Position numbers and translations under genes: made by a program. From Oopsacas minuta (Eukaryota; Animalia; Porifera), in contig JAKMXF010000177.1 of the NCBI GenBank assembly GCA_024704765.1, positions 696,526-760,525 of the forward strand: a DNA stretch of 64,000 bases. The letters run 5' to 3'. How positions within the stretch are numbered: the first letter of the stretch is position 1; each line of letters opens with the position of its first letter. The notes beneath the pieces are model-generated. The model ran no database searches. It was given only the letters and a program-made list of their open reading frames with translations, and had not been told where the DNA came from. Shown here in pieces: positions 1-45,748 of the stretch.

Positions 1-406
1 TACCACCCATAAGAAAACAGAAGTAAACAAAGGTAAATAACTAATATTTGAAGTTTATACCAAATGCAGCACACCATAAGGCTGTTGCCCCTCCAAACTC
101 ATATCCTGTGAAATCAGATTGAACTGTCATTGTGTATTCAAGATCCTAAACCTCTAGAAAATTCTTCAGGATATAGCTTACTATCATATTTTGACCTTTC
201 TGAGCAGCTAGAATTAACGAAGACCCCTTACTGACCTTAGTCTAGAATATATCCTTTGGATGTGTATTCTTTAGTAAAGTTGGTAGTTGAGACTTAAATA
301 ATGGAAATTTCCCTTTCGCTGCAGAATCCAATAATTCTTTATGTAACAATTCATCTGAGTATGTTGATGACGTTGTTATGTGACGTAGAAGATGGCTACT
401 TAACAT
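1..406 (-). pseudogene. FEM1-like ankyrin gene, copy 1 (5' part, runs off window start)
   Basis: ATG at 406 (MLSSHLL...ELLDSAAKG), then GATALWCAA ankyrin motif typical of FEM-1 family. 1-nt frameshift near 300 (also seen in copy 2). The 54-nt intron 1 (7-60) has its AG acceptor changed to GG. Confidence 0.75.
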
Positions 407-502
407 TTCTAATTGAAAGTTCTACAAGTAAAATAGCCAATTTTGTAAATATTCAGTAAATAGAATACGATAGAGAAAGAGGGAAATAAATAAATAATTA
501 TC

Positions 503-1328
503 NNNNNNNNNNNNNNNNNNNNNNNNNNNNNNNNNNNNNNNNNNNNNNNNNNNNNNNNNNNNNNNNNNNNNNNNNNNNNNNNNNNNNNNNNNNNNNNNNN
601 NNNNNNNNNNNNNNNNNNNNNNNNNNNNNNNNNNNNNNNNNNNNNNNNNNNNNNNNNNNNNNNNNNNNNNNNNNNNNNNNNNNNNNNNNNNNNNNNNNNN
701 NNNNNNNNNNNNNNNNNNNNNNNNNNNNNNNNNNNNNNNNNNNNNNNNNNNNNNNNNNNNNNNNNNNNNNNNNNNNNNNNNNNNNNNNNNNNNNNNNNNN
801 NNNNNNNNNNNNNNNNNNNNNNNNNNNNNNNNNNNNNNNNNNNNNNNNNNNNNNNNNNNNNNNNNNNNNNNNNNNNNNNNNNNNNNNNNNNNNNNNNNNN
901 NNNNNNNNNNNNNNNNNNNNNNNNNNNNNNNNNNNNNNNNNNNNNNNNNNNNNNNNNNNNNNNNNNNNNNNNNNNNNNNNNNNNNNNNNNNNNNNNNNNN
1001 NNNNNNNNNNNNNNNNNNNNNNNNNNNNNNNNNNNNNNNNNNNNNNNNNNNNNNNNNNNNNNNNNNNNNNNNNNNNNNNNNNNNNNNNNNNNNNNNNNNN
1101 NNNNNNNNNNNNNNNNNNNNNNNNNNNNNNNNNNNNNNNNNNNNNNNNNNNNNNNNNNNNNNNNNNNNNNNNNNNNNNNNNNNNNNNNNNNNNNNNNNNN
1201 NNNNNNNNNNNNNNNNNNNNNNNNNNNNNNNNNNNNNNNNNNNNNNNNNNNNNNNNNNNNNNNNNNNNNNNNNNNNNNNNNNNNNNNNNNNNNNNNNNNN
1301 NNNNNNNNNNNNNNNNNNNNNNNNNNNN
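503..1328. other. Assembly gap (N-run)
   Basis: 826 consecutive N. Confidence 1.
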
Positions 1329-1337
1329 CGGGTACCA

Positions 1338-1682
1338 ATGAAGGATCCAACTCAGTTTTGGCGGTCCAGTGTCTTAACACGTCTGCGCACCTGTGCAACG
1401 ATAATTTTCTCGCCACCAATATCTTCTGCAGCCGTGGAGAGGTTGTTCAGCCAGGCCGGCAACCTACTTTCAAAAATGAGAAAGAGAATGTCACCGGCGG
1501 TCTTGAAGAAATTAGTATACATCAAATACCAGAAAATGTATACCACAATAATCAAGAAGCTGGGAATTTTAATCGAGCCTAAGGAAGTTGCGATGATAAT
1601 CAACAATGAGCCCATGTCCCTGTCATTTGAAGACGATAGTGATATCGAAGAGTTTATGAATGACAGTTTACATAATATCTAG
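1338..1682 (+). mobile_element. hAT transposase C-terminal dimerisation domain (5' part lost in gap)
   Basis: FW...PISSAAVERLFSQAGNLLSKMRKRMSPAVLKKLVYIK matches the hATC dimerisation motif. Confidence 0.85.
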
Positions 1683-1716
1683 AGCTTCAGTATAACGTTT
1701 AGTATATGAATAGATT

Positions 1717-2249
1717 CAGGGTTTCATCCAGGCGCGTATTTTAAAAAGATATTATAGTTAAGCGCGTGAAAATTTTAACAGCTAGGCGCATGGACGCGCC
1801 TAGGTTAATATCGACAAATAATTCAATGGGTTACGTCCAGGCTTCCATCCAGGAGCGCCACGCGCGCCTACAGGCGTGTATTTACAAAAAATTTGTATAG
1901 TTAGGCGCAAGAAAATTTTGAGAGTTCGACGCGTGTCACGCTCCTATGCTAGGCGTGCTGTATACGCCTAATTCCGATGAGTAATTTAATGGGTTACGTA
2001 AGAATCATAAAGGTCAGAGAGACAATGAATAAATAAGAATATACAATGTTAGGTCAATAGTTACTTATTTAAAGTGAAAGATTCTAGATGACACCTCTGG
2101 AATGTAGTATTAACCGTATAATATGTAGTGGATGTAAGGTCTGCTTAAAATTTAAGTTTGATGCTTCGAAAATTCAAATAGTCTAGGCGCGTAATTAAAA
2201 TCGAGAACTCATTTAGGCGCGCTACATATAAAAGCTGGAAGAAACCCTG
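1717..2249 (+). mobile_element. Non-autonomous hAT element (MITE), 533 bp
   Basis: TIRs CAGGGTTTCATCCAG / CTGGAAGAAACCCTG (1 mismatch). Perfect 8-bp TSD AATAGATT at 1709-1716 and 2250-2257. Relatives at about 36510-36828 and 62816-63199. Confidence 0.93.
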
Positions 2250-2342
2250 AATAGATTTTCATTAGTAATCTACATCTACATAGCGGTTACCTGTACATAA
2301 CAGTCACTACTAGGCTTGAATGGCCGTTATAGACAAGATGTT

Positions 2343-5300
2343 CTAGGTCTTTGAAATATCCATGGATATGGATATAGATATGGATGGGATTTTTCTCATC
2401 GACGGCAAGCCTGGTATTTTGCTATTTATTAGTCCTTTTTGGGTGTACCAAGTAGAGATTCCTGAATCAGAGGATACTCCAGAAGTAGAGCTAACTTTAT
2501 GAGATATATTCGGACTACCGCCTATATACTCACCAGAAGCAGTATCATCAGGATCAGACAGGAAATGCCCGGATATACCAATAGGATTCTCGTATGTAGT
2601 GTTCTTAAAAGGAGAAGGTGAACGAGAGAGAGTGTGTGCTTCTGACGGATCAGGGTAGTAGGTCAAACCACGGTACAATTGATGTTCAGAATCAACCGAC
2701 TCACGGAAGGTCTCTTTCTCCGCATCCTCTATATTTTGTATCTTCACTTTAGCCACATTCTTCTTCTTATAAACCAAACAAACGATAAATAATATCGTAA
2801 ATACGATAATAAGAATAATGATAATGAAGGCTAATGAAGGTGTCCCTACAATTAGAAGTATCCTTCCTATAGGTAATACAGTAGGATCACTACTACACTC
2901 ATCAGATATAGTGTGTAAACAGTGTAGCTTAGATGGAAGAGACAATAGATCACCATCTGGTGTCAATAAAGTAATACCATCAGTAAATATAGGTTCTGAA
3001 TAACTACTATGATCTTGTATAGAAAATAAGCTGGAAATAGGAGGAAGAGACCGTGAGGAATGTAAGTAGATAAATACTTGTGTAGTGATAGAAATCGGGA
3101 GAAATAGATCAGTACTGACGGTATAGAGGGATGGATTTGATTCAGGACTCGCTTCAAATACAATTAAGCTGATTCCACCAGTATAAGTTTGAGATACGAA
3201 TGAACCTATACACAATTCCCAATTAGTATAATCAGATAGATCAGCCATACTGAATAATCCCAAATATACTTTAACTGTATCGAATTGTGTGTAAGGAGAG
3301 TGTTGTATGTCTGATAACTCAACTCTGATAGAGAGATGGCATACGTTAGTGGAATTGAAGGTTTCATAGAAAACTGGTAAAGGCAAAACACCGAAATGCG
3401 AGGAAAATAATCGACGAAAATCTTCGAAGATAACCACACCATCTGCAGTGACGTCATTCATATTTTGTACATAGAAGTGGACCAATCACGAATAACAAGT
3501 TCCACTTCATGAATAAATATTGTAGCAATTTCCAAATCTTTCCCCTATAGAAATGAATAATCAGCTAACCTCCAAACTTCATTAATAGCATCACTAAGAT
3601 ATTTTCATCCGTCAATTCCCTAATACTCAGCCTCCGCAATTGGTTCATTTCTTCAAATAAGTTTAGGCTAACACACTCATCTACATTGCTGTATTCCCAT
3701 ACTGGCTGATCAGCTGTGCATTCATATGGTGGAATACAAGTACCTGAAATTACCTCATACAAAGTATTTGGGCATTGCTTACGAATGGTTATACCAATGG
3801 GTGTATCTGGATATACAGTCCCAGTACTATCAAGAATACTAGGACATTTCAGCCCATCTATAGACGGTGTACAATCTGATCCAGTTGGAAAGAACCCCTG
3901 TAAACATTCGCAGAAATCCACCTAGAATGTTTTCACACTTTTGGGTCGATCCGCATAAATCAAGTGTAGCACACTCATTGATATCCACACACATTTTCTC
4001 CTTACAATCCTCAGTATAGTAGTAAGAAGGTTGTGTGAGATTGTTCGAGGAATATCCAGTAGGACAAACACAATTAAACCCACCTACAATATTCATACAA
4101 ACAGCTGGATACTGTCCACATGCTGGGTAATAGAAACTACACTCATTTATGTCTGTACAGGCAAAGCCATCACCCATGAAACCTTGTTTACACACACAAG
4201 TATAGCTGCCATATGCATTGGTACAGATTGTATCCACGTGACATGGAAACCCAAGACATTCATCGTTATCAAAACAAGGCCCAGGTTCAATTCCTTCAGC
4301 GAAAGCAGGTCTGTTACCAATACAGTGATCTACGTCACAAACTTCAGTGATCAGGTCGCACGAAGTATTTCCACATGGAATCCTCGTAAATCATACTCGC
4401 ATGTATCACTATTCAATACGCTTCCTACACCACATGTCAAGTTGCATACGTCACAATCCATACCTTGAAATGAGCTTGTACATTCACATATGTATATAGC
4501 GTTACCGTCCATACATAGTCCATTCACACAAGGATCAGGTATACAATTGTCAATCACCTCACTGCAGTTCTTAGCAGTGATATCAGGTACACAAATATAC
4601 ATATAATCATGTGGAGGTACATTAAGACAATCTATGGAAAATTCAGGGTCACAAGGATTAGGGTCGCATGCATCATCAACAACACACACACAGGGTATAT
4701 TTGGTCAATAAATATGTACGCTGTATCACAGTCACAATCGTATGTATTTGGGTGGGTAAGGTCAGTACAATTGCTACTAATTCCACACGGATCACAAGAA
4801 CATAAGTCTGCTTCCTGATCGCATAAGTCAACTGTCAGTGTACGAGGACATTGACACCCAGTGCAATTTGAATATGGACTAGTACAATGTTTGCAGTCCA
4901 GCCCACAGGTAGTACAACTAGAATCCTCCCAATACTCTCTACACAATCACATCCAGTACAAATGGTGTTGTGAAAGCCTTCGTTTCCACAGGTTATGCCA
5001 CAAACTGAGCAATCAAATCCTCCCCATGAGGTAATACAAGTACAGCCATGACAAGTTGAATTAGCCGTTCCAGCATTCAAACAGCTGGAAAATTCACAAG
5101 TACTGCAGTCGATACCAGTCCATCTCTCCACACAATTACAGCCATCACAAGTTGAATTTGGTGATCCACCATTCAAACAGCTCGTAAACCCACAAGTATC
5201 GCACTCATCACCACACCAATTCCCTACACAATCACATCCATTACAAGTTGAATTTACTTATCCACCGTTTTTACATACAATAGGACAAGTAGTACAATCG

Positions 5301-6163
5301 GTACCCTCCCACATGTTATTACAGTCATATGTATACACATTATCTCCTATACCATCAATACATAATCCCCCATCTTGGCAAGGAGTACCCAAGCAAGGAA
5401 GGTATTGGCTCTCGCATACAGTACCCAAATAATCAACAGCACAAATACAAGCACTACAATCTGTCCAAGTTGTTCCATTCTGGCCGATTAAATCACAGTT
5501 TGAGCAGTCAGGACCTGATCTATTCGGAGCACATAACACAAGTAGACTCAATATTATACACACAGTTCAAAGGACACATGGCACACACATTCCATCGAGA
5601 CTATATGAGCAACACTCTGATGCAGACTGTCTGTAGCAATAGCCTAATGAGGTATTAACACCAGCTCTAAGACAATCATCATGGCATTCCATACAACCGT
5701 ACATATCACTAGAGAATGGAGAGAAGTTAAGATTACATTCATAACAATCTACACGCAAATAAGAAGAATTTAGAAATACAGGGGGGTTATTAGGTACAGA
5801 AATAGTACCAGTGGTATTATCAACTATCCATATCCCCACGTTACAAATCAAAGACAATCGTGCATAGTAGTTCGCGTCATCTTCTATTACCAAGGTTAGG
5901 AAAATGTAGGTATACTTAGATGTATCATTCTGGTCTCTTACTGAACAGCTGTGATAGGAATCTACCATTGTAGGGGAGCCTCCTAATACTAACCCAATTG
6001 AAAAACCCTCTTTCATAGAATCATCTGGGAAATCACATTCAGCTGATGCTTGTAGACATGTGATGGATAGTAAAAGTATAAGAAAATACTTCAAAACGAG
6101 TCTGATGTTTTGAGTCAAACAAAAATCAACTAATATAAGAACACTAGTTATAAAAACCGGCAT
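2343..6163 (-). pseudogene. EGF-repeat / hormone-receptor-domain single-pass receptor, copy A (frameshifted)
   Basis: Pieces across frames: hydrophobic N-terminus (MPVFITSVLILV), Cys-rich region, many EGF/EGF-Ca repeats (DINEC, C..PC..G.C), HormR-like CPSILDSTGTVYPDTPIG...CP...C...W...DEC, then an open 380-codon segment (2343-3485) with one TM helix, KKK stop-transfer and a Tyr-containing tail. Several frameshifts lack GT-AG introns. Confidence 0.8.
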
Positions 6164-6977
6164 AATTATGGAGATCTGAAAACAATTTTCAGTACACCTC
6201 GAAGTATATCAGCTGATATACTTCCAGAAATTGTAAGTGCGCTGCATGCCTAGTAATAGTTAATTCAATCAAATAGCAGGATATTTCCTTTAAATACAAA
6301 AAATAATACATGCAAAATATAGTACAGCATGATAAATATTACAAACAAGTTCTCTAGTAAACAATACACACAAGTTCTTTAGTAAATATGCACAAAGGAG
6401 CAGGTTTAACTGGAGGAGAGAGAAATAGAAACGTATTCGTCACCTTTTGAAGGTGCTGTGCGATGAAAGTCAATAAAGGTGTGAAAAAACGCAGGTAGTG
6501 TTTCTGCAGATAGTTGGTACTCTACAATAATCCTTACGGACAGACAAGCTAGTCTTAAAGGGTAATACGATCTTAGTGCTAGATACTGTGGGGAAAGTTC
6601 GTTGATACAAGATTCCATAGGCGTTCGATTTGAGGGAGTAACAGAGTCTAAATGTGACCCAGCTTGTATTAACGCGTGGATAACAGAATCAGGAACTGTT
6701 TCTAACATACACGCTAAATGCAACGCGGTTAAACCGTCCTCATCTGAAATCTCTAACATATCTGGGGTAGATAGAGCAATGAATGCGTTCAATACATTTT
6801 CATATTTAAGAAAATACTTTGATTTCATAATAGAATGGAAAATAGGTTCATCTCTTGTTAATGGATGAAATAATAGCTGCAGTGCTTCTAACATCACAGG
6901 ATTTCTATAAACGACAGACTCGAAAGTAGTGAAAGATGGAAATTTCTCCAACCAAATATCAAGAAAAGTTAATACCC

Positions 6978-7231
6978 NNNNNNNNNNNNNNNNNNNNNNN
7001 NNNNNNNNNNNNNNNNNNNNNNNNNNNNNNNNNNNNNNNNNNNNNNNNNNNNNNNNNNNNNNNNNNNNNNNNNNNNNNNNNNNNNNNNNNNNNNNNNNNN
7101 NNNNNNNNNNNNNNNNNNNNNNNNNNNNNNNNNNNNNNNNNNNNNNNNNNNNNNNNNNNNNNNNNNNNNNNNNNNNNNNNNNNNNNNNNNNNNNNNNNNN
7201 NNNNNNNNNNNNNNNNNNNNNNNNNNNNNNN
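6978..7231. other. Assembly gap (N-run)
   Basis: 254 N inside FEM1-like copy 2. Confidence 1.
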
Positions 7232-7905
7232 AACAGTATACCTTGTGTATATACACTTGAAATATGCAGCAAACCTTTCCATTGTCATAACATCAGTATT
7301 GAACGCTGGCAATAGTGTATTTACTTGATGCAAGAGCATTTCAAATTCATCGATAGATGCTTGTGTTGGCATCCAACTTGTCTTCACGACAGCTTGTAAT
7401 AGCTGATACAATAGCTCACAACATCTCCAATAATACACAGAACCTTCACTATACAAGTGGTTGGTTAATCGAATCTTAAGATCACAAGATGTATAGTATA
7501 ATGGCCCGAATACTCTCTCGCTTATTAGCACACACTGAATGAGGTAGTTTTTCTGTGAAATATTATAAAAATCAGTTAATGTTCCAACTTCCTGTACACC
7601 CTCGTATAAATCTATAGCTGGTTTCCCGGGATAACCTAAATTGTGGATTTTTCTCAATTCAAGTGCTTTTCTCCAAAATTCAGTTACTTTAGAAGAAGGA
7701 TGATCACAGAATATCTCTACCCCTCTGACTAACCACATATCAACTTCACATTCCAGAGTACATTCAGGCTGTTTACTGAGATAATCCATTGCATATTCAT
7801 TGTGACATTTGGTAGCTACAAATAAATGACAGGGGGTTGATACACCTCTGGTACTGTGTAGTAAGGTATAGGAGGAGATGGAGATTGGGCTCTACATGGC
7901 CAGAT

Positions 7906-8062
7906 NNNNNNNNNNNNNNNNNNNNNNNNNNNNNNNNNNNNNNNNNNNNNNNNNNNNNNNNNNNNNNNNNNNNNNNNNNNNNNNNNNNNNNNNNNNNNNN
8001 NNNNNNNNNNNNNNNNNNNNNNNNNNNNNNNNNNNNNNNNNNNNNNNNNNNNNNNNNNNNNN
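7906..8062. other. Assembly gap whose flanks overlap (probably spurious)
   Basis: About 43 bp (AGGTATAGGAGGAGATGG...CCAGAT) occurs on both sides of the N-run. Confidence 0.9.
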
Positions 8063-9051
8063 AGGTATAGGAGGAGATGGAGATTGGGCTCTGCATGGCC
8101 AGATTATTTTAGCTCCGAGGTGGATTAATAGGTTGAATATCTCTTTGGATTCTCGTTCTATTGCTATGTGTAATAAGTCTATTCCTGCAGCTGTTGTCTG
8201 ACTGAGATCAGCTTTGCCACAAGTAACTGTATACAAATATATGGTAACTAATATTAAAGTATAATACAGTCAACTCCCAATATTCGAAACCCAAGGGATC
8301 GTGATAATTTCTTCGATATGACTGGGGTAATTTATGTTACTTTGACGGTTTCTACATATTACTTGCCGAGTAATCTAAGAGTATTTTCATTCTCTCTCAA
8401 TACAGCTACCATAAAAGGAGCCTGTCCTTCTTGATTAGCTATATTAATATCAGTTCCCTTATTCAGCAGATACATTATAACTTTCCCTCTATTATGATAA
8501 GACTCGGCTCTAAGCGGAGTAGAATTCGTTGCGTTTGAGTGGTTAATATTCCCCCCGGCTCCGATAAGTTCTCTTACAATAGTGACATTACAACCTATAA
8601 GAAAACAGAAGTAAACAAAGGCAATTAACTAATATTCGAAGTTTATACCTGATGCAGCACACCATAAGGCTGTTGCCTCTTTAATCTCATATCCTGTGAA
8701 TTCAGATTTAACTGTCATTGTGTACTCAAGACCCAAAATTTCTAGAAAATTCCTCAGGATATAGCTTGCTATCATATTTTGACTTTTCTGAGCAGCTAGA
8801 ATTAACGGAGATCCCTTATTGCCCTTAGGCTGGAATATATCTTCTGGATGTGTAGTATTTAGTATAGTTGTTAGGTGAGACTTAATACTGAAAATTTTCC
8901 TTTGGCTGCAGAATCCACTAATTCTTGATGTGACAATTCATCTGAGGTGGTTGACATTTCTAATTGAAAGTTCAACAAGCAAAATAGTCAATTTTGTCAA
9001 TATTCAGTATATAGAACACGATAGAGAAAGAGGGAAATATATACCCAATTA

Positions 9052-9854
9052 AACTGTCCGACAAATTTTCAGCATTTTTTGCTTTTGGAATACACTGTAG
9101 TGTCTCTCATGTATTCAAGCACCCTGATTCCAAATATCCAATCAGTTTTTCTCTATCAGGCAGAGATTTTGTAAAATTCGGAAATATACAAAATCATGTT
9201 TCCATAGATCTCTATAGAATGTATAATTGTATATGTATTAATACCTTCCGTATATATTGTCTAAGAATTCAAATTTTCTTAAAATATATAGAATATTATT
9301 TGCTCTTTCAAGAGGAGATTATCTGATTGTATTTGTATATATTTCTTTTCAATAATGTCTCGTTGATGTTCAAACCCAACAGATTCTGTCTGTTATATTT
9401 GTGGAGAATTTACTACCAAATTTCAGCTGAGAGACATGTCTCCCAATGTACACAAGGGATATGAGCAATATTTTGGTTGCAAGATTGGTGATCAAGATAA
9501 GCCTTGGATACCTCATTTGTGTTGCTCAAAATGTGCAATAGGACTTAGTAAATGGCTAAATGGCTCACGTACTTCAATGCAATTTGCTATTCCCATGGCA
9601 TGATATGGAGGGAACCAAGAGATCATTATACTGATTGTTATTTCTGTTTGACTGATATAATAGGAATCACTTCTAAGACCAAAAAGAATATATCTTATCC
9701 CAATCTTCAGTCTGCGATTCGTCCTGTTGAGCATTCTACAGAATTTACCTCCGCCTATGCCACCTGATAAAACAAGACTACCCCACATCATTAATCAAAG
9801 TGAGCTGAATGATTTGGTTAGAGACTTGAGTTTGACAAAAGATCAAAGTGAATT
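9052..9854 (+). mobile_element. Chapaev3-like (CMC superfamily) DNA transposon, 5' end plus decayed transposase N-terminus
   Basis: Terminus (A/C)ACTGTCC.ACAAATTTT after TTA. Degenerate ORF CYICG...GDQDKPWIPHLCCSKC...W...WREPRDHYTDCYFC fits the Chapa zinc finger. Superfamily assigned from recalled motif pattern, not a search. Confidence 0.75.
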
Positions 9855-9855: not shown

Positions 9856-11807
9856 TATTACACCTGTGATATGATTCAGAACGAATACATCACTTGAGTG
9901 AGAGATTAAACTATAAGATATACTGCCTTCATTCCCTGTGTCTAAATTTGTTGCAGAAATACGACCAATAACTCCACCAGTATTAACAACATGTAAATGG
10001 TCAAAATAGTAATTTTGTTCAGAGAATTCAGGTGCATGCATGTTCCTAGGGGTAACACGTATTTCAAATGATGCAATAACGAAATTACCTCCAAGATCAG
10101 AAGCCTGTATCCTCAGGTAGTATAAGGAATTAACGTCAACACATGGTACTGTATTCAGGAAGAGTATCCCGATAATAGAGTTGATACTAAATACTGGATC
10201 AATATCACCGGATAATATCTTGTACGATAGAATATCTCCGTCTTTATCAATAGTTTCAACCTTGTAAATAGTCATGTATCTATCAGTGCCATCTTCTACA
10301 AACAGCTGATAGATAGAATGTGAAAATTCTGGTGATCAATCGTTCACATTTTCTATTTGTATAATAACAGTTACAAAGCTAGATTTACGGAAAGAAGAAT
10401 AAGCATTATCTGTTGCTGATAAGTCAAACGAGATTTCTACTGGATCTGTTTCAGCATCTAATAACGGAGTTAATACAATTATACCCGTAGTAGAATTCAC
10501 TATACAATAAATATTATACGAAATACTGTATGTAATATCCCCATTGATACCAGTATCCATATTAACAGCATTTGTTTGTAGAATAGAATTTCCAATTGAA
10601 GTTCCTTCTGGTATAGATATAGTGAAGTTATGTTGGGGAAATATTGGTGTGTGTAAATTGGCTGGAATGACGTTAATAATCACGATTGCACTATCTGTAT
10701 GTATAGAGTCATTTACTGATACAGTTATAGTTGGACTCTGAATAACCAATTCCTTTGCTACAAATATATCTCCAGTGAATGGGTCTATATCGAAGTAATC
10801 ACTAGTCGTGGTGAATTGGTATAAAAGAGTTGAGGATGTATCCACATCAGTTGCAATTATTCTACCAATAATACCAGCAACAATTGTATTATTTACTACT
10901 GTAAATATGTAGGTAGATTCGGCGAAAATAGCTGGAGAATCGTTCTCGTCTAAAACTACTATTTCAACAGGAAGTGTAGTGGATTTTCGTTGCCAGGGTG
11001 AAGCGTTATCTTCCGCAGTTATCACCAAACTCAATATTTGTATCTGTTCATAATGAAATAAATTAACAAGGGTTAGAACACCACTACTTTGATCAATAGG
11101 GATATAATAATTATCTGTAATAGTATAAGAAATTACCGCATTAGCTCCTATATCATTATCAGTTGCTGTTATCAGTAATACATCAGTTGAATAATTATTC
11201 TCTAGAATGTTAAATGAACCGTTTGAATTAGAGAATAATGGAGAGTACAAATTAGGTTCTTCTACAAAAATCGTCACTAAAGCTGTAGCAGTATATATCC
11301 CATCATTATATGATATTTCTATAGAATATTTACTAACCAAATTCAGCCCAAAGTCTTCTGTTAATCTGATAACACCATTCTCAGAGATTGTGAAAATAAA
11401 TGGATCAGATATAATAGCATAGGAGAAAGGCTAGTTGATGTTATTACGTCATCAATAATAAAAACTGTACCAATTGGGTTACCTGATTGGAAATTTGAAG
11501 CGAATATAAATGTATAATTAGTGAGAGAAAATTCAGGAATAAAATCGTTAATATCTTCAATGATAATATCAACAGAAATATCAGAATATCTGTATTCGAA
11601 TAGATTACCTGGGTTATATGCTAGAATAGTCAAAGTATACGAGTTCATTTCTTCAAAATCGAGTGAAGTTTTGACGAACAAAGCTCCATCATTAGAAATA
11701 TCGAATACTTCATGAATATTCCCTGTTGAAATGTAATACTCAATAATACCAGAGTCTCCAATGTCAAAGTCAACTGTTTTAAATTAATAGACAAGTTCAG
11801 CTGCACC
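9856..11807 (-). pseudogene. Cadherin-repeat gene fragment (Fat/Dachsous/protocadherin-like)
   Basis: Repeated cadherin motifs (EDINDFIP, LDENDSPA, ATD.D.G.N..I.Y.I, SLDFE). Several frameshifts. Both ends abut unrelated sequence. Confidence 0.85.
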
Positions 11808-12016
11808 AAGTTATGCCACAAACTGAGCAATCAAATCCTCCCCTTGAGTTTATACAATTGCAGCCATTACAAGTTGAATTTAGTAATCCACCATTTTTGA
11901 TACAATAGGACAGGTAGTACAATCGGTACCCTCCCACATGTTATTACACTCACACCTACACACATGATCTCCTATACCGTCAATATATAATTCCTCGCTT
12001 TGACCAGGAGTACCCA
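11808..12016 (-). pseudogene. Third fragment of the EGF receptor gene, joined to the cadherin fragment
   Basis: Matches about 4990-5060 joined to about 5250-5390. Ends at a single N (12017). Confidence 0.8.
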
Positions 12017-13423: not shown

Positions 13424-14263
13424 TTAAAATATGAGAAGGTTATGACCAACAATAACGATAAATCTACACTTGGAGTCTAGTGACACAGCCATAGGCTTAT
13501 AAATACCATCAGTTATCCTATGAAATAGATTACCCCTATTATCAAAAAATTGAATAGCATTATCAACATGAGTGGTAATGATAAAATTCCCATTAACATC
13601 GATACAAAATCCCAACGGACAGGCTAAGAATGGAGAAATAATAAGATCATTCAATTTGTTCAGGTCGTAATCAAACATAGATAAATAGGGTTCACTAGAA
13701 GACAGCACAAATATGTTATCCCTGGTTAGTTCTATGTCTACAGGAGATTCAACTTTAAAAGAATTCACAAAAGGATAGTGATTCAACAGAATATTCACTC
13801 TACCATGATTGCGAACACATAGGTATATTGATTCTTCATTGACAGTTATACCATAAAGTTGATAAGATTTTTCGCTCTTTGACCTTCCTATTCGTGTAAT
13901 AAAATTACCATCAAGATCATATATAGAGAGATCATGATGAGTAATAAACATTTTGTCTTCATAGATAGAAATATAGCGAGGGAGCCTCATCCATTTATCG
14001 ACAAATTTAAATATGAAATGTCCCTCTCTATCAAATACTTGTACTCTGTGGTTATTTGTATCCGTAACATAGATATTATCAGTTGGATGGGACACTGCTA
14101 CTCCCCAGGGATTCTTGAATTGTCCATCACCACTACCTCCCATATTCCCAATTTTTCCTAATTTGGAAACTGGTATTAACTTCTGGGTATAATCTGGAAA
14201 ATAATAAGAATTATCTTCATTCAGAAGACCTACTAACCTCATAACTTTTCTGCTCTTTTCCAT
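13424..14263 (-). CDS. NHL-repeat beta-propeller protein (TRIM-NHL-like, no RING/B-box)
   Basis: 279-aa intronless ORF. GSGDGQFKNPWGVAV...IYVTDTNNHRVQVF NHL motif. Confidence 0.85.
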   Translation of the reverse strand: MEKSRKVMRLVGLLNEDNSYYFPDYTQKLIPVSKLGKIGNMGGSGDGQFKNPWGVAVSHPTDNIYVTDTNNHRVQVFDREGHFIFKFVDKWMRLPRYISIYEDKMFITHHDLSIYDLDGNFITRIGRSKSEKSYQLYGITVNEESIYLCVRNHGRVNILLNHYPFVNSFKVESPVDIELTRDNIFVLSSSEPYLSMFDYDLNKLNDLIISPFLACPLGFCIDVNGNFIITTHVDNAIQFFDNRGNLFHRITDGIYKPMAVSLDSKCRFIVIVGHNLLIF

Positions 14264-14974
14264 AAGTCAGAATAATAAGAAATAAGAGAGTGATTGATGC
14301 TAAGCAAATAATCAAAATGAAGCACGGTAAGATGTAACTCATGCAACGAGTCTAAGTTGTCACGAGAGAACAATGTTGGCGTCGTATACAGTTTTTGAAA
14401 TTTGTGAAATTTCATAGAGAGTACTGATAGGGAGGCGAAGTACTAAAAAGTATGAATACCATGCGCCTTAGGTACATAGAGCATACGCGTAAATAAAGTA
14501 CTAGCGCGCTTCGATGCTAGATCGCTGCGTGAGACAGCATAGAGCATCAAGTGGCCTAAGTATTAAACGGCTAGATTTCTTGATGCCTTTGGTCACTACG
14601 CGACGGGTTAAACTCAGACTAGGTGCCTCGGGGTAACCTTTTCGTGGAAATGCAAATTTGATATTATCCATGGTCCATCCAAATTCCAATTAATGGCCTA
14701 CTGTGGAAATTACGTGGCTTTAGTAAACTGGGCACTTGTATCTAGATTATAATGAATTTCCCAAAAAATATCGAGATTTGGAGAATTTTGAGATATTTTA
14801 TAGATTCCTGATGACGTAATAATCCCATGATGAGTTTGCATTTGGTCAGAGTCATGTCGCCAGGACATGTGTCACATTGAAGGGTACCTGTGATTCAAAT
14901 TTCAAACTTCTATCATATATATTGGCTGAGCAGTGGTTAATAATGTGATTTTTGTAATGCAAAAGAGGAACAAT

Positions 14975-19105: not shown

Positions 19106-19177
19106 TAGCAGGATTGAATGGCTAGTCCTCTGAATTATTTTGTTAAACAATCATCAAACAAAATAGTCAATTTAGTG

Positions 19178-32900: not shown

Positions 32901-34058
32901 CTATAATGCTAATAACAAATATATAAGATACAAATAATAATGCAAAAAATACTCATCGGAACTTCGCGCCCATGATGTATAGTACAATGGCCCGAATACC
33001 CTCTCGGTTATTAGTACACATTGAATGAGGTAGTTTTTCTTGGTAATATTATAAATATCTGTTACTTGTCTCACTTCTTGTACACCCTCATACAAATCTA
33101 CAGCTGGCTTCCCGGGATAACTTAAATTGTGTCTCTCTCTCAATTCAAGTGCTTTGGTCCAAACTTGAGCTACTTTTGAATAATGATAATCCCAGAATCC
33201 CTCTATCCCTCCGACTAGCCACATGTCAACTTCATATTCAGGCGTACATTGAGGCTGTTTTCTGAGATAGTACACTGCATACTCATTGTCACATTTTGCA
33301 GCTACAAATAAATGGCAGGGGAGTTGATGCACCTCTGGTACTGCGTAATTGGGTATAGGAGGAGATGGAGATTGGGCTCTACATGGCCAGATTATTTCAG
33401 CTCCGAGGTCGATTAATAGATTGAATATATTCTGGGGCTTTTGCTCTATTGTTACGTGTAGTGCGTCTATTCCTGCAGCTACTGTCTGACTGAGCTCAGC
33501 TTTGCCACAGGTATCTGTATACAAATATATGGTAACTAATATTAAAGTATAATACAGTCAACTCCCTATATTCGAAGCACAAGGGATCGTGATAATTTCT
33601 TCGATATGACTGGTGTAATTTATGTTACTTTGACTGTTCGGGACAATATTTGTAAAATTACACATATCGATATAAGCGGGTATTACGATATTTCCGTGTT
33701 CGATATAACGTGAGTTAACTGTACGTATAGAAATCGTATAAATATTCCTACTGTAAATTATGTATATGATACCGAGTAATCTAAGAGCATCTTCATTCTC
33801 TCTCAATACAGCTATCATGATTGGAGCCTGTCCCTCACTATTAGCTATTTTATAAATTTCCATCAAGATACAGCTCATTATTTTGTTGTGAATTTTCTGT
33901 GCACCCAGAATTAATGGCGATCCCTTGTTGGCCTTGGGCTGGAATATCTCCTCTGGATTTACAGTGTTTAGTAAAGTTTTTAGTTTAGACCTAAATTCTG
34001 GATATTTCCCTTTCGCTGCGGAATCCAGTAAATCTTTATGAAGCGAACATCTTGCCAT
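32901..34058 (-). pseudogene. FEM1-like gene, copy 3 (internally deleted, 3'-truncated)
   Basis: ATG 34058 (MARCSLHKDLLDSAAKG). First ankyrins and intron 1 are deleted. GT-AG intron 33515-33772. Homology ends after GPLYYTS (about 32985). Confidence 0.8.
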
Positions 34059-34235
34059 TTCTAATTGAATGTTCAATAAGCAAAATAGCCAATTTTGTAA
34101 CTATTCAGTATATAGAATACGATAGAGAAAGAGGGAAATAAATAAATAATTATCCAAGTAGTAAAAAGTAAAAAAGATTCGTAAAAATTCCTATAAATAT
34201 ATCTCTTTTTAGTTTGCCTATTTTCATTTAAATAT

Positions 34236-35815: not shown

Positions 35816-36828
35816 TCATCGAAGTAGTAAAATGTAAAAAGATTCGTAAAGTAAGTCCTAATGATTTAGCTATTTATTGGTTCATTTTAGGTGTACCAGG
35901 CAGAGATTCCTGTATCAGAGGATATACCCCAGAAGTAGAGCTAACTTTATGAGATATATTCAGACTACCGTCTATATACCGCTTTAGGTTGCTGGTTAGA
36001 ACAATTCTATTAAACAATTGTGATTTGGATAATTTAGTTATTTAAATATTTATTCTGATTAAAGTAATACAATCTTTCTTAGCGATGGGATCAATTCAAA
36101 AATAGAAAAACGGTGAGGAAAACAAGAATTAATCAGTGAGAAATTCGGCTCTCGAAGATTATTTTTTCTCATTTTTGCTATACACTGCAAGACCAAAAGT
36201 ATTGAGACACTGTATCCTTTCAGCACAAGTAGCAAAAACACGGCGAGGATACTTTGTAAGATTCTATGGATATAGTAGACAGTAAAACAATAGCTAATTA
36301 TTTGTTATTTACGATTTATGTATTTATGTCAGTTACAAATCATCTTCAGTCTATAAACTAAGGTGGTATGCCTTTTGTACGAGGTATCAATTGTGACAAG
36401 GTGTTCCGATACTTTTGGAAATTGATTTAATTTGAACTAGCGTAAGCATATAATCTAATATGCAATATTCAATCCTGAATCTCGGGATAGCAAATGCTAC
36501 CAGAACCAGGCTTTTATCCAGGAGCCCACGCGCGCCTACAGGCACGTATTTACAAAAAATTTGTATAGTTAGTAGCAAGAAATTTTGAGAGTTAGGCGCG
36601 ATGTATACACCTAATTCCGACGAATAATGTAATGGGTTACGTAACAATCATAAGGACAGAGAGACACTGAATAAAGATAAATATACAATGTTACTTCAAT
36701 AGTTAATTATTTATGGTGAAAGATTCTAGATGACACCTCTGGAATGTAGTATTAACCATATTATATGTAACGGATGTATGGTTCGCTCAAAATCTAAGTT
36801 CGATGCTTCGAAATTCAAATACTCTAGG
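35700..36828. repeat. Segmental duplication, inverted copy of about 62870-64000
   Basis: Long near-identical reverse-complement match, also visible as near-identical ORF translations 36387-36647(-) and 63059-63319(+). Confidence 0.92.
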
Positions 36829-38190
36829 AAAGTATGGGGAATTATCATTTACATCTAAAACGATAAGAATTACATTAGCGAGTGAATACTTGCGATATTC
36901 AGCAGCTGCTAGATCATTAGCTTGAACTTGAAATATAATACCATCTCTATACAACTCATTATCTAACGCACTCAATAGCGTAATACTACCATTATTCGTA
37001 TTAATATGTAGAAATGTGTAATCAGTTAGAATCAAATATTCAACTTGTCCGAGGATGCCTTCATCTAGATCAACAGCTGTTACAGATAAGATAGTATCAG
37101 AATACAGTATATTCTCTTGAATATATACAGTATAGTTATCAGGTGAGGTAAATACAGGAGGGTATGTATTAGTGGGTGTGATGTATACCATAATATCAGC
37201 TGTTGATGATAATGGCATTAAACCGAAATCTGTAGCTCTTACAGTTATACTATACATATCATCAGCTCCAGTTAATGTCCTTTGAGTGTAATAGCGCCAA
37301 AACTTGATTCTACTTTAAAATAATCAGCTGATTGAAACATTATAGAATACACAACCACACTATTGGAAGCAAAATCTATATCAACAGCCAGTACAGTCAA
37401 GATAATAGAGTTAACTGGTGTATCTTCTTCCCAATTACTATGTAATTATATTCAGTGAATATAGGAGGATTATCATTCACGACATCAATATTGATCACAA
37501 GAGTAACTAAAGCAGTATTACCTGGAAAGCCGTGATCAACAGCTGATATTTGTATTGTATAATAAGCATTCATTTCTCTGTATAAGAGATTGTGTACTGA
37601 CACGACTCCAGATAGGGGGTCAACAACAAAATCACCCGGGGGGAATATAATAACGAATCTGGCTATTGAGACCTATGTCTATATCAGTAGCAATGAACTG
37701 GGCTATGCTTGTAGTAACTGGTGTATTCTCAGGGAGAGATTTGTATTGGTGATTAGTAGTGAATATTGGAAAATTATCATTAATATCCAGTATGGTAATT
37801 GATACATTAGTGTATGCTGTGTAGCGTATAGGACCTCCAGGTGCATCTACTGCGGAAATTGTTATTAAAATAGAGGATACGTCAACCTCACGATCGAAAA
37901 AACCAAAAACTATCACTCCACCGTTATCATCAAGTCTAAAACGACTATCTACTTCAACTACACTATATGTAGTTACACCATCAATACCATTATTTGCATC
38001 AGTAGCTTCTACAAGCCCTATCATTGTGTTACCAGGTGAATTCTCTTCGAAAGTAAATGTGTAGTTATTTTGTTGGAATTGAGGTTCATATTCATTGATA
38101 CCAGTTATAGAAATGAAGCAGGTTAGTACTTCAGAGGTTAGACTTGGGAACTTTATCTTTCGCACTTAGGTATATAATATGAGATTCTAC
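36829..38190 (-). pseudogene. Cadherin-repeat gene fragment (different repeats from 9856-11807)
   Basis: GINEYEPQF, ATDAN.G.DG, FDRE, LDINDNFP, VVNDNPP, LDVNDNSP. Frameshifts. Truncated at both ends. Confidence 0.85.
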
Positions 38191-38194
38191 AGAC

Positions 38195-38989: not shown

Positions 38990-40856
38990 CCGGGGGAATG
39001 ATAAGCCAAAATATTACACACAAGTTCTTCAATAAATATACACAAAAGCAGCAGGCTTAACTGGAGGAGAGAAAGAGGAGAGATGTATTCGTCACCTTTT
39101 GAAGGTGCTGTGCGATGAAGGTCTATGAAGGTTTCAAAAAACGCAGGTAGTGTGTCTGTAGACAGTTAGTACTCTATGATAATCCGTGCGGACAGACACG
39201 TTAGTTTCAACGGGTAATACGATATTAGTTCTAAATATTGTGAGGAAAATTTGCTGACACACGATTCTATAGAAGTTTGATTTGAGGGAGTCACAGAGCC
39301 TAAATGTGATCCAGCTTGTATTAACGCGGGGATAATAGAATCAGGAACAGTTTCCAACATTCACGCGAAATGTAACGCGGTTAAACCATCCTTATCTCAC
39401 ACCTCGAACATATCTGGAGTAGATACAGCAATGAATGCGTTCAGTACATTTTCATGTTTAAGAAAATACTCTGATTTCATGATAGAATGGTAAATTGGTT
39501 CATTTCTCGTCAATAGATGGAATAATAGCTGCAGTGCTTCCAATATCACAGGATTTCTATTCCCCTTCGCTGCATCTATCATAACTGGAGCCAGTCCCCC
39601 TTGATTCGCTATACTAATATTAGCGCCATTATTTAATAGACATATTATGACTTCAACTCTATTATTGTAAGACGCGGCGCTAAGCGGAGTAGAATTGGTT
39701 GCGCTTGTGTGATTAATAGACGCCCCGGCTTATAGAAGTTCTCTTACAATAGCGATATGTGCACCTATAAGAAAACAGAAGTAAACAAAGGTAAATAACT
39801 AATATTTGAAGTTTATACCTAATGCAGCACACCATAAGGCTGTTACCCCTCTAATCTCATGTACTGCGTGATTAGATTTAACAGTCATTGTGTAATCCAG
39901 TTTCAAAACTTCTTCAAATTTCTTCAGGATATAGCTTACTATATTATAATGACGTTCCTTAGCAGCTGGAATTAACGGGGACCCCTTATTTCCCTCAGGT
40001 TGGAATATTTTCTCTGGATCTGGATTCTCTAGTAAAGTTGTTAGTTGAGAGCTAAATTCTGGATATTTCTCTTTTGCTGCGGAATCCAATAATTCTTTGT
40101 GACAATTCATCTGAGCATGTTGATGACGTTGTTGTGAGAGGTTGAAGATGCCTACTTGCCATTTCTAATTGAAAGTTCTACAAGCAAAATAACCAATTTT
40201 GTAAATATTCAGTATATAGAATACGATAGAGAAGTTTCTCAAACCAAATATCAAGAAAAGCTAATATCTGATTCAAACACTTACGATAAGAAACGTTCGT
40301 ATTAGCTTCTATCCCTTGCACCAAAACAGCATATCTTGTGTAAATTCACGTGAAATAATCACCAAACCTTTCCATTGTCATCACATCTGTACTGAACGCT
40401 GCCAATTGTGTATTTACCTCATTCATGAGCACGTTAAATTCAATGATTGATGTTCGTGTCACCATCCAACTTTTCTTTACCACAGCTTGTAATAGCTGAT
40501 GCAATAACTCACAGCATCTCAGATAATTCAGAGAACCTTCACTATACAAATGATTGGTCAATCTCATCTTAAGATCACTAGATGTCTTGTACAATGGCCC
40601 GAATACCCTCTCGATTATTAGTACACACTGAATGAGGTAGTTTTTCTTGGTAATATTATATCTGTTACTTGTCTCATTTCTTGTACACCCTCATACAAAT
40701 CTACAGCTGGCTTTCCGGGATAACTTAAATTGTGTCTCTCTCTCAATTCAAGTGCTTTTCTCCAAACTTGAGCTACTTTTGAAGAAGGATACTCCCAGAC
40801 TATCTCTATCCCTCTGACTGACCACAAATCAACTTCACATTCAGGAGTATATTCAG
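38990..40856 (-). pseudogene. FEM1-like gene, copy 4 (scrambled)
   Basis: C-terminus (38990-39560) is fused directly to N-terminal ankyrins (39560-40180, intron 39765-39818). The missing middle part lies upstream at 40234-40856. Confidence 0.8.
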
Positions 40857-42882
40857 TGAGATTAGAGGGGCAACAGCCTTATGGCATGCGGCATTAGATA
40901 CCAACTTCAAATATTAGTCATTTACCTTTGTTTACTTCTGTTTTCTTATAGGTGGTAATGTCAATATTGTTAGAGAACTTCTAGAAGCCGGTGCGAATAT
41001 TAACCACTCAACGCAACAAATTCTACTCCGCTTAGAGCCGCGTCTTATCATAATAGAGAGGAAGTTAAAATGTGTTTGTTGAATAAGGGAGCTGATGTTA
41101 GTACAGCTAATCAAGTGGGACAGGCTCCTGCCGTGATAGCTGTATTCAGATTGAATGAAGATGCTCTTAGATTACTCGGTATCATATAGATAATTTACAG
41201 TAGGAATATTTATACGATTTCTATACGTACAGTTAACTCACGTTATATCGAAGACGGAAATATCGAAATACCCGCTTATATCGATATGTGTAATTTTACA
41301 AATATTGTCTCGAACCGTCAAAGTAACATAAATTACACCAGTCATATTGAAGAAATTATCACGATCCCTTGTGCTTCGAATATTGGGAGTTGACTGTATT
41401 ATACTTTAATATTAGTTACCATATATTTGTATACAGATACCTGTGGCAAAGCTGAGCTCAGTCAGACAGTAGCTGCAGGAATAGACGCACTACACGTAAC
41501 AATAGAGCAAAAGCCCCAGAATATATTCAATCTATTAATCGACCTCGGAGCTGAAATAATCTGGCCATGTAGAGCCCAGTCTCCATCTCCTCCTATACCC
41601 TACTACGCAGTGCCAGAGGTGCATCAACTCCCATACCATTTATTTGTAGCTGCCAAATGTGACAATGAATATGCGGTGAATTATCTCAGTAAGCAGCCTG
41701 ATGTACTCCTGGATTTGAAGTTGACATGTGGCTAGTCGGAGGGATAGAGGGATTCTGGGATTATCATTATTCAAAAGTAGCTCAAGTTTGGACCAAAGCA
41801 CTTGAATTGAGAGAGAGACACAATTTAAGTTATCCCGGGAAGCCAGCTGTAGATTTGTATGAGGGTGTACAAGAAGTGAGACAAGTAACATATTTATAAT
41901 ATTACCAAGAAAAACTACCTCATTCAGTGTGTACTAATAATCGAGAGGGTATTCGGGCCATTGTACAAGACATCTAGTGATCTTAAGATGAGATTGACCA
42001 ATCATTTGTATAGTGAAGGTTCTCTGAATTATCTGAGATGCTGTGAGTTATTGCATCAGCTATTACAAGCTGTGGTAAAGAAAAGTTGGATGGTGACACG
42101 AACATCAATCATTGAATTTAACGTGCTCATGAATGAGGTAAATACACAATTGGCAGCGTTCAGTACAGATGTGATGACAATGGAAAGGTTTGGTGATTAT
42201 TTCACGTGTATTTACACAAGATATGCTGTTTTGGTGCAAGGGATAGAAGCTAATACGAACGTTTCATATCGTAAGTGTTTGAATCAGATATTAGCTTTTC
42301 TTGATATTTGGTTTGAGAAATTTCCATCTCTCACCACAGTCGAGTCAGCCATCTATAGAAATCGTTTGATATTGGAAGCACCGCAGGCTATATCTCATCC
42401 ACTAACAAAAGATGAGCCTATGTTCCATTCTATCATGAAGTCAAAGAATGTTGTTCGACATGAGTGCATTGAACGCATTCATTTCTGCAGCAGCCCTAGA
42501 TCTGCTAGGGGCAACAGATAAGGACGGTTTAACCGCATTACATTTGGCGTGTATGTTGGAAACTGTTACTGATTCTGTTATCCCCGCGTTAATACAAGCT
42601 GTGTCACATTTAGACTCTGTTACTCCATCAAATCAAACTTCTATAGAATCGTGTGTCAGCAAATTTTCCCCACAATGTTTAGAACTAATATCGTATTACC
42701 CGTTGATACTAACGTGTCTGTCCGCACGGATTATCGTAGAGTACCAACTGTCTACAGAAACACTACCAGCGTTATTCACACATTTATTGACCTTCTACGC
42801 AAACCACCTCCCCAAATTGACGAATATATCTCTCTTTCTCTCTCCTCCAGTTAAGCCTGCTGCTTTTGTGTATATTTATTAA
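40857..42882 (+). pseudogene. FEM1-like gene, copy 5 (opposite strand, 5'-truncated)
   Basis: Starts at EIRGATALWHAA. Intron-1 donor mutated GT>AT (40898). Intron 41179-41436. Frameshifts. Ends with DGLTALHLAC and YPLILTCLSARII. Confidence 0.82.
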
Positions 42883-42939
42883 AGAACTTATGTTAATATT
42901 TCTAAATGCTCTATTATATTTTGGGGTGGTAATGACTGC

Positions 42940-45640: not shown

Positions 45641-45748
45641 CAAATATAGCAGCTAATGCGGAAATTTCTTATACTATTACAGATAATTATTATATCTCTA
45701 TTGATGAAAGTAGTGGTGTTGTAACCCTTGTTAATTTATTTGATTATA
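45640..45748 (+). pseudogene. Cadherin fragment fused in frame to EGF-receptor copy B
   Basis: Matches about 11050-11155 in reverse. ORF 45388-45771 reads ...FEASPESN|IAANAEISYTITDNYY... Confidence 0.85.

What the first reader, a model, noticed from the sequence alone, without database searches (positions are those of the whole stretch)
1..8957. Tandemly amplified two-gene cassette: FEM1-like E3 adaptor plus EGF/HormR receptor
Seen: on the minus strand the order is FEM1-like (8957-6406), receptor (6163-2343), FEM1-like again (406-1, off window). The same pair recurs inverted at 40857-45640. At 35816-35980 and 63720-63900 the FEM1 upstream flank sits next to receptor-tail sequence. Established: FEM1 proteins are Cullin-2 substrate receptors with ankyrin repeats and a C-terminal BC/VHL box, and a matching PLRLACLSVRII motif is present. 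Inference: a surface receptor and a ubiquitin-ligase adaptor were duplicated repeatedly as one unit and diversified by birth-and-death, as in immune or allorecognition loci. All copies in this window look damaged, so any working copy is elsewhere.
Basis: partly seen in the sequence, partly recalled or inferred. Interest (0 to 1): 0.75.

Follow-up and report, generated by a model that had tools for sequence, protein, structure and literature searches.

The report
Decayed duplicates of a sponge gene trio
This stretch of the glass sponge Oopsacas minuta holds broken copies of a three-gene neighbourhood that survives intact on another scaffold, and the supposed "receptor" is only the seam where a tandem duplication joined pieces of two different genes, so the finding is mostly ordinary genome debris.

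Summary
The sequence-level observation holds. On the minus strand lie a FEM1-like gene (8957-6406), an EGF/HRM "receptor" (6163-2343) and a second FEM1-like start (406-1). An inverted partial pair lies at 40857-45646. All copies are damaged.

Scaffold C318 of this genome (Oopsacas minuta) carries the intact parent locus: giant cadherin, then FEM1-like, then a 1562-aa adhesion GPCR with a 7TM domain. The window's "receptor" is a chimera. Window 3467-6163 is the GPCR's 5' half and 2414-3465 is the cadherin's tail. Their join (C318 155900|149257) is what a tandem duplication of a 6.6-kb segment would produce, and it is out of frame.

The same junction occurs five times in the assembly, as two sequence types. 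No copy outside C318 carries the GAIN/7TM half. Only C318 has a full-length intact pair, so a birth-and-death receptor family is not supported.

Blocks that are 100% identical to scaffold C57 end exactly at assembly gaps, so the copy number is probably inflated by the assembly.

In about seven related glass-sponge assemblies the FEM1-like and GPCR genes share a contig, and their trees match a single-copy gene tree. That indicates one conserved linked pair per species.

The parts
1..502 (-). FEM1-like copy B, 5' part. Exon 1 is 406-61 and exon 2 starts at 6; the copy runs off the window. It is a pseudogene with two in-frame TAG stops and intron-1 acceptor AG>GG.
   Evidence: 93.6% identical to C318 150364-150865.
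503..1328 (.). Assembly gap. The ungapped C57 has 618 bp here: the rest of the hAT element, its 8-bp target-site duplication and 62 bp upstream of the FEM1-like gene.
   Evidence: Flanks match C57 18801 and 18182 at 99.2% and 100%.
1329..2413 (.). Decayed hAT transposon, about 1.64 kb in C57, inserted 10 bp after the cadherin stop codon. The ORF at 1338-1682 (+) keeps a hAT dimerisation domain.
   Evidence: Dimer_Tnp_hAT E 2e-8. Target-site duplication CAAAATAC and inverted-repeat end CAGGCTTGCCG seen in C57.
2414..3465 (-). Copy of the giant cadherin's 3' tail: half of a dockerin/EF-hand-like motif, a single TM helix and the cytoplasmic tail. A 2-bp deletion near the end lets the frame read into the hAT element.
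   Evidence: 95.4% identical to C318 150310-149257. The parent ORF has cadherin domains.
3466..3467 (-). Tandem-duplication junction (C318 155900|149257). It is out of frame by 2 nt; the GPCR frame reads TAC AAA ATA TGA.
   Evidence: The junction is identical in window copy 1, window copy 2 and C57. It occurs 5 times in the assembly, while the two halves lie apart on C318.
3467..6163 (-). Copy of the 5' half of the adhesion GPCR: signal peptide, cysteine-rich EGF-like array, EGF_CA and HRM. It lacks the GAIN/7TM half and is a pseudogene.
   Evidence: 93% identical to C318 153015-155900, with 7 frameshifting indels, 2 stops and two 93-bp deletions. Pfam hits.
6406..8957 (-). FEM1-like copy A. 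Exon 1 is 8957-8649, exon 2 is 8594-8367 and exon 3 is 8226-6406. It is a pseudogene stitched from three contig blocks across two gaps.
   Evidence: It has two 1-bp frameshifts, a 36-bp deletion and donor 2 GT>GC.
9053..9854 (.). Transposon fragment abutting the FEM1-like upstream flank at the position equivalent to C318 150366. The same element end abuts the cadherin-tail side at 35814/35818.
   Evidence: 95% identical to 35814-35019, inverted.
9856..12016 (-). Cadherin-body fragment (9856-11807 = C318 145087-143125) joined to a GPCR 5' scrap (11807-12016).
   Evidence: Cadherin Pfam hits. The block is 100% identical to C57 9162-7002 and is bounded by Ns.
32971..34186 (-). FEM1-like copy C, 5' half only, with stops.
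35818..35979 (-). Fragment of the cadherin 3' end plus the intergenic stretch up to C318 150366. This is the parent arrangement just upstream of the FEM1-like gene. A twin fragment lies at 63728-63900 (+).
36826..38193 (-). Cadherin-body fragment (C318 142785-141415, 96%).
39009..40856 (-). FEM1-like copy D, with its pieces in scrambled order.
40857..42901 (+). FEM1-like copy E, running from late exon 1 to the 3' end. It is 86.7% identical to C318 and is frameshifted.
42921..45646 (+). Second junction copy. The GPCR 5' part lacks its first ~1.25 kb and carries a 742-bp insertion at 43457-44198. The junction lies at 45327, followed by the first 320 bp of the cadherin tail and then a cadherin-body scrap to 45747.

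Best explanation
Window 1-8957, together with 32.9-45.7 kb, is a graveyard of segmental duplicates. They derive from a tightly packed three-gene locus that is intact on scaffold C318 of the Oopsacas minuta assembly.

The parent locus reads, on one strand: a giant single-pass cadherin (stop at ~150295), a three-exon FEM1-like gene (150460-152745), and a single-exon 1562-aa adhesion GPCR (153015-157704; EGF array, EGF_CA, HRM, 7tm_2). The spacers are only 165 bp and 270 bp.

A ~6.6-kb segment was duplicated head to tail. It ran from inside the cadherin's last exon (149257) to inside the GPCR's exon (155900, about 50 codons after HRM). The seam therefore places the GPCR ectodomain coding sequence in front of the cadherin's TM and cytoplasmic tail, 2 nt out of frame, with a stop three codons on. 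This mimics an 'EGF/HormR single-pass receptor' next to each FEM1-like copy.

Shown: the breakpoints, the shared junction, the absence of the 7TM half from all copies, the damage, and the hAT and other transposon insertions.

Inferred: the copies were non-functional from birth or soon after. They then spread and scrambled through further duplication, inversion and deletion. Part of the apparent copy number is assembly redundancy.

The FEM1-like and GPCR genes travel together because they are immediate neighbours. This neighbourhood is conserved across glass sponges.
For: - The parent locus has long open frames and the expected domains.
- Window-to-C318 BLAST gives 3467-5150 = 155900-154217, 2414-3465 = 150310-149257, and the same break in copy 2 at 45326/45328.
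- The junction sequence is identical in three copies, and the frame analysis shows it is out of frame.
- A 100-nt junction probe finds 5 places, as two sequence types. C318 matches only as two separate halves.
- The GPCR 3' half (600 aa) has no second copy in the genome; the next hit is a 30% paralogue on C3.
- Ungapped C57 shows cadherin body, FEM1-like, GPCR 5' half, junction, cadherin tail, hAT, FEM1-like, then a truncated GPCR 5' part.
- Identity blocks end at gaps, and C177 626-652 kb repeats window 1-47 kb at 99.4-100%.
- The assembly was built with hybrid SPAdes, then SSPACE and GapFiller (PMC10280926).
Against: - The 380-aa tail ORF is open in three identical copies. About two stops would be expected by chance, so this is weak evidence for constraint.
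- dN/dS of the FEM1-like copies against C318 is 0.41-0.52. That is no higher than the 0.385 seen between C318 and C332, so neutral decay is not demonstrated by that measure.
- Synonymous divergence is uneven: FEM1-like 0.14-0.16 against 0.04-0.09 for the flanks. A single simple duplication does not explain this.
- NCBI annotates spliced models over these pieces (LOD99_1952 and LOD99_1929).
- No read depth or RNA data could be examined.
Confidence: 0.8

Rival explanations
1. First reader's model. A receptor plus a CRL2-adaptor cassette is amplified as a functional unit and diversifies by birth and death, as in immune or allorecognition loci. The window shows the dead members.
For: - The pair is copied together several times on C177 and C57.
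- The FEM1-like to GPCR linkage is conserved on 8 contigs of related sponges, one of them only 7.8 kb long.
- The basal pair on contig 809977 may be an old duplicate of the unit.
Against: - There is only one full-length intact pair in 61 Mb.
- The copied unit cuts through both flanking genes, and its junction is out of frame.
- The relatives' pairs mirror the single-copy PRP38 tree, at about one pair per species.
- No dN/dS value significantly exceeds 1.
Confidence: 0.08
2. Mostly an assembly artefact. The copies on C177 and C57 are one locus, or two haplotypes, placed several times by SPAdes and SSPACE. There would then be at most one real extra copy beside C318.
For: - Three 100%-identical copies of a 5.6-kb block, with identity ending exactly at N runs.
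- A gap whose two flanks overlap by 42 bp.
- The assembly method.
Against: - The copies differ from C318 by 4-15% and carry a junction, transposon insertions and deletions that are absent from C318. At least some non-parental copies are therefore real.
- Two junction types, 94% alike, exist within one window.
- Several FEM1-like copies in the window differ from each other by 5-29%.
Confidence: 0.1
3. The chimera is, or was, a working new gene. It would be either a secreted EGF/HRM ectodomain acting as a decoy, or a new single-pass receptor using the cadherin's tyrosine-rich tail.
For: The 5' half keeps the signal peptide. The tail ORF of 380 aa is open. Gene models have been annotated here.
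Against: - The junction is out of frame in all copies.
- The ectodomain part carries 7 frameshifts and 2 stops.
- Copy 2 lacks the first 1.25 kb and carries an insertion.
Confidence: 0.02

Closest known systems
FEM1A/B/C (substrate receptors of Cullin-2 RING ligases)
   Same: The N-terminal ankyrin block aligns position for position with FEM1B (54-193 to 40-175, E 2e-36) and FEM1C. The middle and C-terminal parts are colinear with the sponge's own canonical FEM1 on C11 (E 5e-27). The C-terminal box aligns to FEM1B 529-627.
   Different: Identity to the canonical sponge FEM1 is only ~23%. The gene belongs to a separate paralogue lineage, seen so far only in glass-sponge-like assemblies. The window copies are pseudogenes. 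Elongin/Cul2 binding is untested.
Adhesion (class B2) GPCRs, e.g. CELSR/Flamingo and latrophilin-type receptors
   Same: The parent gene on C318 has an EGF/EGF_CA array, an HRM-like domain and a 7tm_2 domain in one 1562-aa ORF. A relative's contig carries a cadherin-EGF-7TM version of 2097 aa, which is Flamingo-like.
   Different: The window copies stop about 50 codons after HRM and have no GAIN or 7TM part. Pfam did not detect GAIN or GPS even in the parent.
Chimeric pseudogenes at tandem or segmental duplication junctions
   Same: The distal breakpoint is joined head to tail to the proximal breakpoint. The junction is shared by all descendants. Decay and transposon insertions followed.
   Different: Nothing essential differs. 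This is a new instance in a glass sponge, complicated by assembly redundancy.
C. elegans TRA-2 receptor / FEM-1-CUL-2 pathway (from my own knowledge, not tested)
   Same: A membrane receptor and a FEM-1 ligase adaptor act in one pathway.
   Different: There is no homology between TRA-2 and this GPCR. There is no evidence here of any functional coupling, only gene adjacency.

Membership tests
FEM1 family | N-terminal ankyrin-repeat block colinear with FEM1B/C | tested here: met
   P0001, the C318 protein, aligns 54-193 to FEM1B 40-175 (E 2e-36) and 26-228 to FEM1C 8-204. Ank_2 in window exon 2.
FEM1 family | Colinear middle helical region and C-terminal ankyrin part, matched to a bona fide FEM1 | tested here: met
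   exon 3 residues 20-472 align to residues 177-631 of the C11 protein (E 5e-27); that C11 protein matches FEM1B over 45-627 (E 1.6e-51).
FEM1 family | C-terminal BC/VHL (Cul2) box | tested here: met
   residues 377-470 align to FEM1B 529-627 (E 6e-4). YYPLKLACLSARIIVQY aligns to YYPLALTCLSARAIQRH. This is sequence level only.
FEM1 family | Binds Elongin B/C-Cul2 and a degron | not testable with these tools
   This needs biochemistry.
FEM1 family (window copies as working genes) | Intact reading frame and splice sites | tested here: not met
   frameshifts, stops and lost splice sites in copies A and B; stops in the other copies.
Adhesion GPCR | Secretin-type 7TM domain | tested here: not met
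   The parent on C318 has 7tm_2 (E 3.3e-15). No window, C177 or C57 copy has the 3' half.
Adhesion GPCR | GAIN domain with GPS motif | tested here: inconclusive
   Pfam gives no hit at E<=0.5 in the parent. Only a degenerate C..NHY motif is visible by eye.
Adhesion GPCR | Extracellular adhesion modules (EGF_CA, HRM) | tested here: met
   EGF_CA E 9e-20; HRM 24.6 bits, just under the 26.2 cut-off. One search shows the same modules in the parent.
Birth-and-death receptor family (immune or allorecognition type) | Several intact, diversified paralogues in one genome | tested here: not met
   one full-length intact pair, on C318. The C332 copy has exon 3 only.
Birth-and-death receptor family (immune or allorecognition type) | Signs of diversifying selection | tested here: inconclusive
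   Pairwise Nei-Gojobori dN/dS is 0.41-0.72, and 1.15 on 371 codons with only 8 synonymous changes.
Tandem segmental duplication | Head-to-tail junction joining the distal to the proximal breakpoint, shared by all copies | tested here: met

The most novel reading that the evidence does not exclude
The tight cadherin, FEM1-like, adhesion-GPCR neighbourhood has 165-bp and 270-bp spacers and all three genes on one strand. The FEM1-like/GPCR pair shares a contig in about seven glass-sponge genomes. This neighbourhood might be a functional module in which a dedicated Cullin-2 adaptor controls turnover of its neighbouring surface receptors. The O. minuta duplicates would then be failed offshoots of an actively rearranging locus.
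Probability: 0.1. Interest if true: 0.55.

Novelty: new member of a known kind. Interest (0 to 1): 0.22.

Why it matters
The main value is corrective.
- Two annotated O. minuta proteins, LOD99_1952 and LOD99_1929, are gene-prediction read-throughs of pseudogene fragments.
- The 'adhesion-GPCR ectodomain on a single TM helix' noted on this window is a duplication seam and not a new receptor architecture.
- The end of scaffold C177 and all of C57 are redundant, low-confidence assembly.

A small positive result also emerges. Glass sponges carry a lineage-specific FEM1 paralogue that has stayed next to one adhesion GPCR through the divergence of their main sampled lineages. This could be followed up cheaply with public contigs and RNA-seq.

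Tried and rejected
The relatives' contigs could not be read, so linkage there rests on matching contig lengths and on one 7.8-kb contig.
C177 596-696 kb was therefore seen only through the loci returned.
Homologues of the cadherin tail in relatives were not searched.
Exons were searched by reference, and the database's own protein P0001 was used for the full-length comparison.
- A Pfam search for GAIN/GPS gave nothing.
- dN/dS did not separate pseudogenes from the intact paralogue. My first GPCR run was off by one base; this was corrected.
- Rejected: that the frame changes in the receptor are introns. The parent is one uninterrupted ORF and the changes are 1-2-bp indels.
- Rejected: that C332 holds a second intact unlinked FEM1-like gene. 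It has exon 3 only.
- A literature search found no description of this linkage.


Full report
Organism and assembly. The window is the last 64 kb of scaffold C177 (696526-760525 of 760525) in a 61.46-Mb, 365-scaffold genome. Database names identify it as Oopsacas minuta. The genome paper reports 365 scaffolds and 36% G+C. The assembly was built with hybrid SPAdes on Illumina plus corrected PacBio reads, then SSPACE, Pilon and GapFiller (PMC10280926).

Observation. On the minus strand, Pfam finds ankyrin repeats in the pieces between 8957 and 6406. It finds EGF_CA, cEGF, EGF_3 and a near-threshold HRM domain between 4390 and 3568. A 380-aa ORF with one hydrophobic helix lies at 3485-2346. A second FEM1-like start lies at 406-1. 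The observation therefore stands.

Gaps, tested first as requested.
- The flanks of gap 7906-8062 repeat the same 42 bp with one mismatch, so this gap has no real length.
- The flanks of gap 6978-7231 correspond to points 55 bp apart in C57 and 58 bp apart in C318.
- The flanks of gap 503-1328 are 618 bp apart in C57.
C57 has no Ns between 10 and 20 kb and shows the same gene order, so that order is not created by the gaps. However, window 1329-6977 and 9856-12016 are 100% identical to C57, and the identity ends exactly at the Ns. In addition, C177 626-652 kb repeats window 1-47 kb at 99.4-100%. Such blocks are what a graph assembler yields when it re-uses a collapsed repeat, so the copy number in the assembly is an upper bound.

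The parent locus. Genome-wide searches with the FEM1-like middle region and with the receptor tail both pointed to scaffold C318, where the matches lie in long open frames. All on one strand, C318 carries three genes.
- A giant cadherin, with open frames of 3883+, 1596 and 1956 aa. It ends in a dockerin/EF-hand-like motif, one TM helix and a cytoplasmic tail.
- A three-exon FEM1-like gene with GT-AG introns of 54 and 261 bp, starting 165 bp after the cadherin.
- A 1562-aa single-exon adhesion GPCR with EGF_CA and a 7tm_2 domain (E 3.3e-15), starting 270 bp after the FEM1-like gene.
NCBI names the last two genes 'fem-1-like protein C-like' and 'SCO-spondin-like'.

The 'receptor' is a seam. BLAST of the window against C318 splits the receptor in two. 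Window 3467-6163 is the GPCR's first 2.9 kb (to C318 155900). Window 2414-3465 is the cadherin's last 1.05 kb (from C318 149257). On C318 the cadherin tail lies upstream of the GPCR, so the join 155900|149257 is the head-to-tail junction expected from a tandem duplication of the 6.6-kb segment 149257-155900. That segment contains the whole FEM1-like gene.

The junction sequence is identical in window copy 1, window copy 2 (45327) and C57. A 100-nt probe across it finds five places, three identical and two others identical to each other, whereas C318 matches only as two separate halves. This indicates a single origin. The join is 2 nt out of frame: the GPCR frame reads Y-K-I-stop. The 600-aa GAIN/7TM half has no second copy anywhere in the genome. 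The 'single-pass EGF/HormR receptor' was therefore never an in-frame gene.

Damage.
- Against the uninterrupted parent ORF, the window's GPCR half has seven frameshifting 1-2-bp indels, two stop codons and two 93-bp deletions of EGF-like units.
- FEM1-like copy A has two 1-bp frameshifts, a 36-bp deletion and a GT>GC donor. Copy B has two TAG stops and a lost acceptor.
- The other copies carry stops or are truncated and scrambled.
- A 1.64-kb hAT element sits 10 bp after the cadherin-tail stop, with an 8-bp target-site duplication.
- The annotated proteins LOD99_1952 and LOD99_1929 splice FEM1-like exon 3 onto GPCR fragments and end in frameshifted sequence. I read them as prediction artefacts.

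Linked versus unlinked copies. FEM1-like matches occur on C177, C57, C318, C332 and, as a small fragment, C25. C11 carries the canonical FEM1, which is 23-24% identical. The C332 copy is exon 3 only, with no GPCR within reach and another exon-1 scrap 4.4 kb downstream. The GPCR's nearest paralogues (C3, C343, C111, C22) have no FEM1-like neighbour among the hits. The genome thus has one full-length intact pair.

Selection. Pairwise dN/dS against C318 is 0.41-0.52 for FEM1-like exon 3, 0.57 for the cadherin tail and 0.72 for the GPCR half. It is 1.15 for part of copy 2, with few synonymous changes. The intact-looking C318/C332 comparison gives 0.385. These values neither prove neutrality nor suggest diversifying selection. 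Synonymous divergence is two to three times higher in the FEM1-like part than in the flanks, which I cannot explain. Gene conversion or different duplication ages are possible.

Relatives. The protein search found intact FEM1-like proteins (57-72% identity) and GPCRs (51-61% identity) from unnamed ENA assemblies. On the 7838-bp contig the calls are the FEM1-like C-terminus and the GPCR N-terminus cut by the contig end, which is the C318 arrangement.

The two gene trees agree with each other. They also agree with the tree of PRP38, a single-copy gene that the window itself encodes at 18119-19150. Each tree has one clade with contigs 1118058 and 2097362, and a second clade that joins O. minuta. 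PRP38 differs between the 1118058 and 2097362 contigs, so these come from different genomes. The simplest reading is one conserved pair per species. An exception may be the deep-branching pair on contig 809977.

Verdict. What was amplified, however, is a duplication segment whose ends cut two genes. It is not a receptor-adaptor cassette under birth-and-death evolution. Interest is low, apart from the conserved FEM1-like/adhesion-GPCR neighbourhood, which is a modest lead.

Noticed in passing
window 18119-19150 (-): PRP38 splicing-factor gene. In two related glass-sponge assemblies its orthologue lies on the same contigs (1118058 and 2097362) as the intact FEM1-like/GPCR pair. In O. minuta it sits among the decayed copies, while the intact trio is on C318. 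Either the C177 end and C318 are neighbours in the real chromosome, or the window is the ancestral site.
   Followed up: partly
window 9040-9070 and 35805-35825: The same transposon end (9053-9854 = 35814-35019, inverted) abuts the two halves of one site, C318 position 150366. The FEM1-like side is at 9051 and the cadherin side at 35818. This suggests a transposon-associated inversion or rearrangement.
   Followed up: partly
window 1329-2413; C57 17098-18739: A 1.64-kb hAT element with the 8-bp target-site duplication CAAAATAC and inverted-repeat end CAGGCTTGCCG, inserted 10 bp after the cadherin stop. Its remnant ORF keeps the hAT dimerisation domain.
   Followed up: yes
L045 (C318) 1157-1320; window ~3465-3400: The cadherin's membrane-proximal region matches Pfam Dockerin_1 (31 bits, above the cut-off) and EF-hand_7. 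This is a calcium-binding pair unusual for an animal cadherin. The duplication breakpoint cuts through it.
   Followed up: no
window 6406-8957 versus 2414-6163: Synonymous divergence from C318 is 0.14-0.16 in the FEM1-like gene but 0.04-0.09 in the adjoining GPCR and cadherin parts of the same unit. The history is therefore mosaic, through gene conversion or different duplication ages.
   Followed up: partly
relatives' contig 809977 (P0023): A 2097-aa protein with eight cadherin domains, EGF modules and a C-terminal half 51% identical to the GPCR's GAIN/7TM part. It is Flamingo/CELSR-like and lies on the same contig as a plain GPCR (P0022) and a FEM1-like gene (P0009).
   Followed up: partly
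window 13427-14266, 29515-30759, 55007-55855: Three ORFs with NHL-repeat/beta-propeller-like sequence. NHL scored E 2e-12 in the first; the other two were not scanned, and 13942-14138 resembles 30078-30274 at 69%. This may be a small local family.
   Followed up: no
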